From Prasinococcaceae sp. CCMP 1430 (Eukaryota > Plantae > Prasinodermophyta): DNA of 64,000 nucleotides. The stretch spans positions 183,979 to 247,978 of the forward strand of contig RQSC01000025.1 in the NCBI GenBank assembly GCA_013416795.1. The letters run 5' to 3'. Made by a program: the position numbers and the translations under genes. Below the pieces are notes generated by a model. The model saw only the letters and a program-made list of their open reading frames with translations. It did no database searches and was not told where the DNA came from. Positions 59,699 through 61,100 of this stretch are shown in pieces. How positions within the stretch are numbered: the stretch's first letter is position 1; every line of letters starts with the position of its first letter.

Positions 59699-61100
59699 AT
59701 TTCGATTCGACGTTCCGCGCTTTGGGTCCCTTTTGATATGCAATGATATAGCCCAAATTTATATCATTGCATATCAAGCGGGGGCCATCTTGATATGCAA
59801 TGATATAACACCGCGGTACAAATTTCGAGCGCGTCTACGAACCGCGAAAGCGCCCCTCGCGCCCCTGCGAAATGACGACCGTTTTCAACACCCGCCAGGC
59901 GGAAAATTTCGATTCGCCGTTCCGCGTTTTGGGTCCGTCTTGATATGCAAGGATATAGCCCGTTTTTATATCATTGCATATCAAGCGGGGGCCGTCTTGA
60001 TATGCAATGACCTATAATACGGTCAAGGATTTGGGTGCGAAAATATTCCGCGGTGGCCCAGCGGAGGCGCGCATGGGTGCGTTTTGACCTCGGCCGGCCC
60101 CGCGCGCGCGCCATCGATTTCGATTCTTCGTTCCGCGGTTTTGATATGCAGTGATATGCCATCATTGCATATCAGAAAATCCCCCTCCCGATATGCAATG
60201 ACCTAAAACAGCGGTTCACATTTCGATGGCAGCCGCGTGCCGCGAAACCGCGCGCGGGCGCGCACGTGCGGCTTGAGCTCGCGCGCGTCCTGCCGCGGAA
60301 TTTCGATTCGCCGTTCCGCGCTTTTGGTCCCTCTTGATATGCAATGATATAGCCCAAATTTATATCATTGCATATCAAGCGGGGGCCGTCTTGATATGCA
60401 ATGATATAACACCGCGGTACAAATTTCGTCGCAGATCTCGCACCGCGAAAGCGGGCGGGAGCGGGCCGCCGCGCGGATGCGAAATGACCTACATTTCGGG
60501 CACGCAGTTGGCCGAGATTTCGGATGTCAACTTCCGCGCTTTTGGTCCGTCTTGATATGCAATGATATAGCCCGATTTTATATCATTGCATATCAAGCGG
60601 GGGCCGTCTTGATATGCAATGACCTATAATACGGGGAAATATTTCGTGACGCGCGTAATCCGCGATCGGCCGGCGGGGGCGCGCGCACCTGCGTTTTGAC
60701 CTCCTTCCGCCCCCTCCCCCCCCCCGGTGGGCTTCAGATTTCGATTCTTCGTTCCGCGGTTTTTATATGCACTGATATGCCATCATTGCATATCAGGAAA
60801 TCCCCCGCGCGATATGCAATGATATAGAAACGCGGGACACATTTCGAGGGGGGCTTTGGCGCCGCAAAGCGCGAAGCGCGCGAGGCGGGTCGTTGCTTGC
60901 GAATTGACCTTTTTCGTTCATTTCGGCGATTCTGCCAGTGCGGACGAAGCAGATTTCGATTCTTCGTTCCGCGCTTTTGATATGCATTGACGTACCATCA
61001 TTGCATATCAGGAAATCCCCCTCGCGATATGCAATGATATAGAAACGCGGGACACTTTTCGAGGGGGAATCGAAAGCGCGAATCCCGGAACGCCGAGCGC
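59699..61100. repeat. Array of seven ~183-221-bp units, each with a GATATGCAATGA hairpin plus a third direct copy; order A1-A2-B-A1-A2-B-B
   Basis: Unit starts (ATTTCG..., usually ATTTCGATTC) at about 59699, 59906, 60117, 60300, 60517, 60738 and 60953. Perfect 18-bp stem 59733-59750/59760-59777 and 19-bp stem 60333-60351/60361-60379. Confidence 0.95.

What the first reader, a model, noticed from the sequence alone, without database searches (positions are those of the whole stretch)
59699..61100. Subtelomeric higher-order array of hairpin/iteron units
Seven ~200-bp units each carry three copies of an AT-rich GATATGCAATGA-type motif: an inverted pair (up to 18-19-bp perfect stem, 9-nt loop) plus a direct third copy. 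Each is preceded by ATTTCGATTC..CGTTCCGCG (degenerate in unit 5). Units fall into classes repeating as A1-A2-B (period about 600-620 bp). The motif blocks are nearly invariant while the GC-rich spacers have diverged strongly, which points to selection on about 21 binding sites or hairpins rather than simple satellite homogenisation. Hypotheses (inference): an iteron-type replication origin, recombinase or transposase sites, a nucleosome-phased boundary element, or small hairpin RNA genes. I do not recognise it as a described repeat.
Basis: partly seen in the sequence, partly recalled or inferred. Interest (0 to 1): 0.75.

Follow-up and report, generated by a model that had tools for sequence, protein, structure and literature searches.

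The report
Palindrome repeat array beside algal telomere
Seven roughly 200-base repeats next to telomere-type DNA in a GC-rich green alga keep three short sequence boxes at fixed distances while the DNA between them has decayed, which suggests docking sites for an unknown DNA-binding protein; I found no relative elsewhere.

Summary
Window 59699-61160 holds seven tandem units of 183-220 bp in the order A1-A2-B-A1-A2-B-B. All 21 copies of GATATGCAATGA in the 64-kb window lie here, against about 1 expected by chance.

Each unit has an AT-rich core (111 or 131 bp, 42-45% GC) and a GC-rich spacer (72-104 bp, 62-81% GC).

- Conservation is mosaic. The second and third motif copies, an inverted pair always 28 bp apart, are identical in all seven units. 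A 21-bp leader box is kept in six. The first copy, both loops, the tail and the spacers vary.
- Core geometry is rigid. The classes differ only by two indels of exactly 10 bp; U5's decayed leader box may add 1 nt.
- There is no stem covariation, no Rfam family and no coding potential.
- I found no relative in viral, metagenome or prokaryote DNA, or among predicted proteins.

Best reading (confidence 0.4): an old telomere-adjacent tandem repeat of the kind known from green algae, whose cores are fixed-geometry binding modules for a sequence-specific protein. The main rival is function-free concerted evolution of palindromes.

"Subtelomeric" is plausible but unproven. The scan's notes show no similar array on other DNA.

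The parts
59699..59905 (+). Unit 1 (class A1): core 59699-59829, arms at 59735 (+), 59764 (-), 59792 (+); spacer 59830-59905
59906..60116 (+). Unit 2 (class A2): core 59906-60036, arms at 59942 (+, 1 mismatch), 59971 (-), 59999 (+); spacer to 60116
60117..60299 (+). Unit 3 (class B): core 60117-60227 (20 bp shorter), arms at 60143 (+, 1 mismatch), 60162 (-), 60190 (+); spacer to 60299
60300..60517 (+). Unit 4 (class A1): core 60300-60430 (95% identical to unit 1 core), arms at 60336, 60365 (-), 60393; spacer to 60517
   Evidence: (D2)
60518..60737 (+). Unit 5 (class A2): core 60518-60648 with a degenerate leader box, arms at 60554, 60583 (-), 60611; spacer to 60737
60738..60952 (+). Unit 6 (class B): core 60738-60848, arms at 60764 (+, 2 mismatches), 60783 (-), 60811; spacer to 60952
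60953..61160 (+). Unit 7 (class B): core 60953-61063 (93% identical to unit 6 core), arms at 60979 (+, 1 mismatch), 60998 (-), 61026; the rest runs into the junction with the X element
59415..59660 (+). Four degenerate 58-79-bp repeats with telomere-like heptamers, directly on the centromere side of the array. Class A units carry the same CTTTGGGT between the leader box and arm 1.
   Evidence: (D4, D7-D9)
61162..61590 (+). Telomere-abutting 'X' element. Its first 303 bp are 98% identical to 63249-63551.
61594..61843 (+). TTTAGGG tract, G-strand pointing right, internal to the window
63783..64000 (+). Second telomere-type tract, beginning with TCTAGGG variants and then TTTAGGG

Best explanation
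This is an old, non-coding, telomere-adjacent tandem repeat. A three-unit block was duplicated once and its last unit once more. It belongs to the general kind of species-specific subtelomeric repeats known from green algae. What has been kept in it is a 111-131-bp AT-rich core that acts as a fixed-geometry cluster of protein-binding sites. The cluster comprises a 21-bp leader box and an inverted pair of 13-14-bp sites 28 bp apart, as expected for a dimeric sequence-specific DNA-binding protein. A third, upstream copy is dispensable in class B. Seven such modules in a row would load the factor densely just inside the chromosome end. There it could set a chromatin boundary, nucleate silent chromatin, or drive transcription or replication starts. 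Shown here: the anatomy, the mosaic conservation, the rigid spacing, the lack of coding, known-RNA or covariation signal, and the position next to telomere-type repeats. Inferred: that a protein binds, and what binding achieves.
For: All motif copies in 64 kb are here. Arms 2 and 3 are identical in all 7 units, while 61% of the other core columns vary. Conserved and variable segments alternate within about 60 bp: among class B units the pairwise differences are leader box 0, arm 1 2-3, arm 2 0, loop 2 1-3, arm 3 0. Gene-conversion tracts would be expected to smooth this out. Position 9 of arm 1 has changed to three different bases in the three B units, while arms 2 and 3 stayed intact. Distances inside the cores are constant (14, 28 and 30 bp in all units). 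The two class-defining indels are each exactly 10 bp, about one helical turn, whereas spacer lengths drift from 72 to 104 bp. Cores of duplicated units are 93-95% identical, including their GC-rich, CpG-containing parts. Their spacers are barely above shuffled level: 0.52-0.62 against 0.49 +/- 0.03. There is no covariation, and stem extensions break uncompensated. No Rfam family was found. Stops occur in most frames, and array ORFs have no protein relatives. Precedents exist for subtelomeric binding-site arrays and algal subtelomeric repeats.
Against: This is one locus in one genome, with no orthologue or second copy to measure constraint against. No binding protein is known and the motif matches no factor I can verify. 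Invariance across copies can also arise from concerted evolution. The 10-bp indels have a mutational explanation too, namely slippage between short repeats spaced 10 bp apart in the same sequence. The true chromosome-end position is not proven, because the telomere tract is internal to the contig.
Confidence: 0.4

Rival explanations
1. A function-free palindrome satellite. The AT-rich inverted repeats provoke breaks or template switching, and short-tract gene conversion among the many arm copies keeps them identical. The GC-rich spacers, too diverged to pair, drift freely.
For: Invariant copies give no covariation signal. The loop between arms 2 and 3 in class B resembles the reverse complement of the class A loop: 8-10 of 16 matches against 5-6 direct, P about 0.002. 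That is a DNA-level flip typical of recombining inverted repeats. In Chlamydomonas, multi-copy en-bloc duplication within subtelomeric repeat arrays is documented and copies stay more than 99.5% identical to the local consensus.
Against: Arm 1 lies between the conserved leader box and arm 2, yet it accumulates unit-specific changes. A conversion tract that covers both neighbours should have corrected it. The unique 21-bp leader box is not a palindrome and has only one copy per unit, yet it shows 0 differences among B units and 0-1 among three A units. Class-specific differences persist in the loops.
Confidence: 0.25
2. Tandem genes for a small structured RNA of about 110-130 nt, with gene-plus-diverging-spacer organisation as in 5S or spliced-leader RNA arrays.
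For: A sharply bounded conserved core with fast-diverging spacers, and no indels inside the cores. The folds are strong, with z of -2.0 to -5.3 as single-stranded DNA.
Against: No Rfam hit reaches gathering score; only sub-threshold miRNA-like hairpin hits appear. There are no compensatory pairs, and arm 1 changes and stem extensions break pairing. A T4 run sits about 22 nt into the plus-strand core, and no consistent Pol III terminator follows on either strand (read). An 18-20-bp stem is short for a Dicer substrate (my knowledge).
Confidence: 0.12
3. A remnant of a mobile element: subterminal transposase-binding repeats (En/Spm, hAT or foldback style) or a tandemly amplified MITE-like core.
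For: A 12-mer in direct and inverted orientation recalls En/Spm TnpA sites (my knowledge). The core is flanked by ATTTCGA on both sides and has a short outer inverted pair, TTCCGCG and CGCGGNA.
Against: No second, inverted array or any further motif copy occurs in 64 kb. No Pfam family was found in the neighbouring ORFs I scanned. The outer inverted pair is not terminal. Seven same-orientation copies about 200 bp apart fit tandem duplication, not insertion. No copy was found in viral, metagenome or prokaryote DNA.
Confidence: 0.1
4. A replication origin, in which the sites are initiator-binding iterons and the palindromes help unwinding.
For: AT-rich islands in a 68% GC genome. Yeast core X elements at chromosome ends carry ARS consensus and Abf1 sites.
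Against: Classical iterons are same-orientation repeats next to an initiator gene. Here the copies alternate and no Pfam family of any kind was found in the neighbouring ORFs scanned. The idea cannot be tested from sequence.
Confidence: 0.05

Closest known systems
Species-specific subtelomeric tandem repeats of green algae (Sultan, Subrin, Subrecs, Subrel-I; Chaux-Jukic et al. 2021, PMC8287924)
   Same: Tandem units of 166-850 bp near the telomere. GC-poorer than the genome. En-bloc duplication of several units. Telomere-like sequence inside or beside the units. Non-terminal telomere tracts can be embedded. A shared sequence next to the telomere at many ends, as in Ostreococcus. No similarity between species.
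   Different: Sultan copies within an array are more than 99.5% identical to the local consensus over the whole unit. Here only three short boxes survive and the spacers are near random. The array is small (7 units). Whether it is shared among chromosome ends could not be checked. The palindromic three-site core is not a feature reported for those repeats in the sections I read.
SPE2 motif arrays bound by PfSIP2 in Plasmodium falciparum subtelomeres (Flueck et al. 2010, PMC2829057)
   Same: Arrays of a strictly spaced bipartite motif confined to telomere-associated repeats. They are read by a two-domain sequence-specific factor and linked to chromosome-end heterochromatin rather than gene activation.
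   Different: The motif and organism are unrelated. SPE2 is a bipartite consensus motif read by two adjacent AP2 domains, not a 28-bp-spaced inverted pair. Binding is proven there and only inferred here.
Yeast core X / STR elements and human subtelomeric CTCF-cohesin sites (review PMC7374410)
   Same: Defined protein-binding sites (Abf1, Tbf1; CTCF) within 1-2 kb of the telomere repeats that act as insulators, proto-silencers or TERRA promoters. Degenerate telomere repeats lie next to them.
   Different: Those sites are single or few per end and lie in elements shared by all ends. Here there are seven repeated modules at one known locus.
FRT-type recombinase target (two inverted 13-bp elements plus a third direct one; from my knowledge, not tested)
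   Same: An inverted pair plus a third copy in direct orientation. One loop appears flipped between classes.
   Different: The spacers between arms are 9-16 nt rather than 8 bp. The unit is repeated seven times. No recombinase domain was found in the window ORFs scanned.

Membership tests
Green-algal subtelomeric tandem repeats (Sultan/Subrel kind) | Head-to-tail array of a 100-900-bp unit | tested here: met
   Seven units of 183-220 bp in one orientation. TRF missed the array because the spacers are too diverged.
Green-algal subtelomeric tandem repeats (Sultan/Subrel kind) | Lies next to, or within a few kb of, the terminal telomere repeats | tested here: inconclusive
   A TTTAGGG tract lies 494 bp beyond the last core, in the correct end orientation. 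However, the tract is internal: more sequence and a second tract follow, and note s1-400150 places further DNA beyond the window.
Green-algal subtelomeric tandem repeats (Sultan/Subrel kind) | Same repeat shared by several chromosome ends of the species | not testable with these tools
The scan's notes on 666 windows list no similar array, which is only weak evidence.
Green-algal subtelomeric tandem repeats (Sultan/Subrel kind) | Lower GC than the genome (typical, not strictly defining) | tested here: met
   Cores are 42-45% GC and window 60001-62000 is 55%, against about 68% elsewhere.
Green-algal subtelomeric tandem repeats (Sultan/Subrel kind) | Whole units nearly identical within an array (typical of Sultan, not strictly defining) | tested here: not met
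   Spacer match fraction is 0.52-0.62 against 0.49 for shuffles. Only the cores are 87-95% identical within a class by the same all-column measure.
Iteron-type replication origin | Several same-orientation 17-22-bp repeats at helical spacing beside an initiator gene | tested here: not met
   Copies alternate + - + at 29 or 19 and 28 bp, and modules lie about 200 bp apart. No Pfam family of any kind was found in the neighbouring ORFs scanned.
DNA-transposon subterminal repeats / foldback element | A second terminus in inverted orientation, target-site duplication, and a transposase or dispersed copies | tested here: not met
   No further motif copy or unit-like sequence occurs in 64 kb on either strand. 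Dispersed copies elsewhere in the genome were not testable.
Any described RNA family (Rfam 15) | Match at the family's gathering score | tested here: not met
   The whole window gives 0 matches at gathering. The array gives only miRNA-type hairpin hits at 22-27 bits against thresholds of 35-100. No tRNA was found.
Structured RNA or selected hairpin in general | Compensatory changes that keep pairing | tested here: inconclusive
   12-13 pairs per stem never vary. There are 0-1 double changes, no better than shuffles, and 10 pairs depart only by unpaired cells.
Subtelomeric protein-binding motif arrays (SPE2/PfSIP2-like, by function) | A demonstrated sequence-specific binding protein | not testable with these tools
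   This needs EMSA, pull-down or ChIP. Only the sequence signature is shown here: invariant sites, fixed spacing and variable surroundings.

The most novel reading that the evidence does not exclude
The cores are true chromosome-end cis-elements of this early-branching green lineage. A lineage-specific factor would bind as a dimer on the invariant inverted pair, with a partner on the leader box, in helical register. The seven modules would then build a boundary, silencer or telomere-directed promoter. The fast-evolving telomere-type Myb protein noted elsewhere in this genome is one candidate, but that link is pure speculation. If true, this would be the first defined protein-binding module in a green-algal subtelomere, and it would come with a ready probe for fishing out the protein.
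Probability: 0.2. Interest if true: 0.6.

Novelty: new variant of a known kind. Interest (0 to 1): 0.4.

Why it matters
Subtelomeric repeats of green algae have so far been described mainly as homogenised, species-specific satellites with no known binding sites. Here the satellite has decayed almost completely, except for three short boxes held at fixed distances. That pattern picks out a 13-14-bp inverted pair and a 21-bp box as candidate functional sites. It also gives a direct handle, a roughly 50-bp probe, for finding a chromosome-end-binding protein in Prasinodermophyta, a phylum with almost no molecular genetics. If the pattern is instead neutral, the array is a clean small example of palindrome-driven concerted evolution working at a 15-bp scale.

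Tried and rejected
- Exact-pattern scans of viral contigs with the 18-mer arm, the arm 2-gap-arm 3 pattern and the leader box gave 5, 5 and 0 loci. None has the paired structure and all are chance matches.
- The metagenome scan with arm 2-gap-arm 3 gave 43 loci. Each holds one unrelated palindrome, none has BLAST similarity to the array, and GC is 30-65%.
- The prokaryote genome scan gave 0.
- As a 'protein shadow' trick I searched array ORFs from both strands. The word search for the plus-strand and minus-strand ORFs and HMMER against 1.84 billion representatives for the plus-strand ORF all gave nothing. A blank is weak evidence here, because such ORFs may never have been called as genes.
- Rfam at E <= 1 gave only sub-threshold hairpin look-alikes.
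- TRF did not detect the ~200-bp array.
- Pfam gave no hits on ORFs flanking the array or in 61844-63250.
- A hammerhead or other ribozyme idea was dropped, as there was no Rfam hit.
- I considered a CRISPR- or integron-like repeat-spacer reading and rejected it: the spacers keep islands of mutual homology and the context is a eukaryotic nucleus.
- Literature searches found no description of Prasinoderma subtelomeres.
- I did not verify the species name myself; it comes from earlier notes.

Full report
**What is there.** The window is about 68% GC, has N gaps and ends in TTTAGGG arrays, so it is nuclear DNA of a eukaryote. Earlier notes of this scan name the green picoalga Prasinoderma coloniale; I did not verify the name.

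Between 59699 and 61160 lie seven head-to-tail units of 183-220 bp. The 12-mer GATATGCAATGA, allowing 2 mismatches, occurs 23 times in the window. All are inside 59735-61037, against 1.1 expected. Twenty-one are true copies, three per unit in the order + - +. 43 of the window's 45 positions with a perfect 12-bp stem and short loop are in the array.

Class A units (U1, U2, U4, U5) have an 18-bp perfect palindrome with a 9-nt loop. The middle arm also pairs with the third arm, up to 20 bp in U1, so each unit has two overlapping palindromes.

**Anatomy.**
- Each unit is an AT-rich core (131 bp in class A, 111 bp in class B; 42-45% GC) followed by a GC-rich spacer (72-104 bp; 62-81% GC).
- The core reads: 21-bp leader box, linker, arm 1, loop 1, arm 2 (inverted), loop 2, arm 3, then a tail ending in ATTTCG.
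- Distances are rigid. Unit start to TTCCGCG is 14 bp, arm 2 to arm 3 is 28 bp, and arm 3 to the tail ATTTCG is 30 bp in all seven units.
- Leader to arm 1 is 22 bp in class A and 12 bp in class B. Arm 1 to arm 2 is 29 bp in A and 19 bp in B.
- So the classes differ by two indels of exactly 10 bp each. The cores carry no other indel, apart from about 1 nt in the decayed leader of U5.
- The class order is A1-A2-B-A1-A2-B-B, with periods of 601, 612 and 621 bp. A three-unit block was therefore duplicated once and the last unit once more.

**Pattern of change.**
- Cores of duplicated units are 95% (U1/U4) and 93% (U6/U7) identical.
- Their spacers score 0.52-0.62 matched columns, against 0.49 +/- 0.03 (maximum 0.56) for shuffled spacers. 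Only a few islands such as CCGCGAAAGCG survive.
- Composition does not explain this, because the GC-rich, CpG-containing parts of the cores (leader box, loop 2, tail start) are also kept between paralogues.
- Within the cores the conservation is mosaic. Arms 2 and 3 have 0 of 24 variable columns, against 53 of 87 elsewhere (Fisher p = 1e-8).
- Among class B units the pairwise differences are: leader box 0, arm 1 2-3, loop 1 0-2, arm 2 0, loop 2 1-3, arm 3 0, tail 1-9.
- Among U1, U2 and U4 the leader box differs at 0-1 positions. U5 has lost it, with 8-9 differences.
- Position 9 of arm 1 is G, C and T in the three B units, so arm 1 is drifting there.

**Hairpin or sequence?** I counted pairs on fixed-register alignments.
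- In the arm 2/arm 3 stem, 12 pairs never vary. One pair shows a double change in a single unit. Seven flanking pairs depart only by unpaired cells. No measure exceeds the shuffles.
- In the arm 1/arm 2 stem there is no double change, and the arm 1 substitutions are one-sided (one G-U, four mispairs).
- So there is no evidence that pairing is what is kept. The 12-14-nt sequence is kept and the stem extensions are not.
- Loop 2 of class B resembles the reverse complement of loop 2 of class A: 8-10 of 16 matches against 5-6 direct, P about 0.002. That is a flip of the kind that recombination or template switching between inverted arms produces.

**What it is not.**
- No Rfam family reaches its threshold in the window. 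The array gives only weak miRNA-type hairpin look-alikes. There is no tRNA.
- The short ORFs across the array are translations of the repeats. They have no relatives in the word-indexed protein collection, and the plus-strand ORF has none among 1.84 billion representatives.
- No other unit-like sequence or inverted partner exists in the window.
- Exact-pattern scans of viral contigs, metagenome contigs and prokaryote genomes returned only unrelated single palindromes or nothing.

**Surroundings.**
- Left of the array are four degenerate 58-79-bp repeats full of telomere-like heptamers (59415-59660). Further left are a 45-N gap and GC-rich sequence. The nearest ORF with a Pfam match on that side is a HAT-repeat/GRF-finger ORF at 52474-54690.
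- Right of the array comes an 'X' element. 61162-61464 is 98% identical to 63249-63551.
- Next is a 250-bp TTTAGGG tract with the G-strand pointing outward (61594-61843). Then come 1.4 kb of unique DNA, a second X element and a second tract (63783-64000).
- So the array is telomere-repeat-adjacent and very probably subtelomeric, but the tract next to it is not shown to be a physical end.

**Interpretation.** Green algae carry species-specific subtelomeric tandem repeats: Sultan 850 bp, Subrin 350 bp, Subrecs about 300 bp, and Subrel-I 166 nt in 1-11 copies.
- They are GC-poorer than the genome, are duplicated en bloc, and are often associated with telomere-like sequence and embedded non-terminal telomere tracts.
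- Ostreococcus has a shared sequence right next to the telomere.
- The array fits this kind in place, size, composition and mode of growth. It differs in being almost fully decayed apart from three boxes, whereas Sultan copies are more than 99.5% identical to the local consensus.

Invariant sites, fixed spacing, 10-bp indels and free surroundings together form the signature of a composite protein-binding module. Arrays of such sites are known at chromosome ends. Examples are SPE2/PfSIP2 in Plasmodium, Abf1 and Tbf1 sites in yeast X/STR elements, and CTCF-cohesin sites within 1-2 kb of human telomeres.

I therefore favour binding modules for a dimeric sequence-specific factor, with a role in chromatin boundary or silencing or in telomere-directed transcription (confidence 0.4). 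The binding and the role are inference.

**Rivals.**
- Neutral concerted evolution of palindromes (0.25). It explains the invariance and the flipped loop. It explains poorly why arm 1 drifts while flanked on both sides by conserved boxes, and why the non-palindromic, once-per-unit leader box is kept.
- Tandem small-RNA genes (0.12). This fits the gene-plus-spacer look but has no covariation, family or terminator support.
- A mobile-element remnant (0.10). It lacks a partner end, a transposase domain in the ORFs scanned, and dispersed copies in anything I could search.
- An origin of replication (0.05). This cannot be tested here.

**Limits.**
- This is one locus.
- The blanks in the public collections apply only at the sensitivity of exact patterns and of called ORFs.
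- The scan's own notes (666 windows of this genome) list no similar array, so the scan has not reported this element before on other DNA.

Noticed in passing
window 59415-59660: Four degenerate 58-79-bp repeats, each holding telomere-like heptamers (CTTTGGGTT, TTTGGGG, CAGGGTTA), lie directly before the array. The same CTTTGGGT sits between the leader box and arm 1 of class A units, which hints at a shared origin or a telomere-repeat-binding-protein site cluster.
   Followed up: partly
window 61162-61590 and 63249-63780: Two copies of a telomere-abutting element. Their first 303 bp are 98% identical. Each is followed by CCCTAA-type fragments and then a TTTAGGG tract. The second copy has a 63-bp telomere insertion at 63551-63613.
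   Followed up: partly
window 61844-61900 (minus strand): The first bases after the internal telomere tract translate to a peptide ending ..KKYMDKKLSVKLNAN. From memory this resembles the N-terminus of Sm-G/LSm proteins, but Pfam could not confirm it because the piece is too short. The tract's orientation fits a broken fragment joined onto an existing telomere, or an assembly join, and not healing of that break.
   Followed up: partly
window 63783-63845 and 61660-61675: Both telomere tracts begin with TCTAGGG variant repeats before switching to TTTAGGG.
   Followed up: no
window 62601-62735: 3.8 copies of a 20-21-bp repeat (consensus GGGGCGGAATTTAGGACCAG), followed by a run of 25 G.
   Followed up: no
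window 52474-54690 (+): A long ORF with HAT repeats (PRP39/Syf1/Suf-like) and a GRF zinc finger. It is the nearest ORF with a Pfam match on the left side of the array.
   Followed up: no
window 59190-59234 and 61162: A 45-N gap lies 465 bp before the array, and a single N sits at the array/X junction. Assembly of this end deserves a check against long reads.
   Followed up: no
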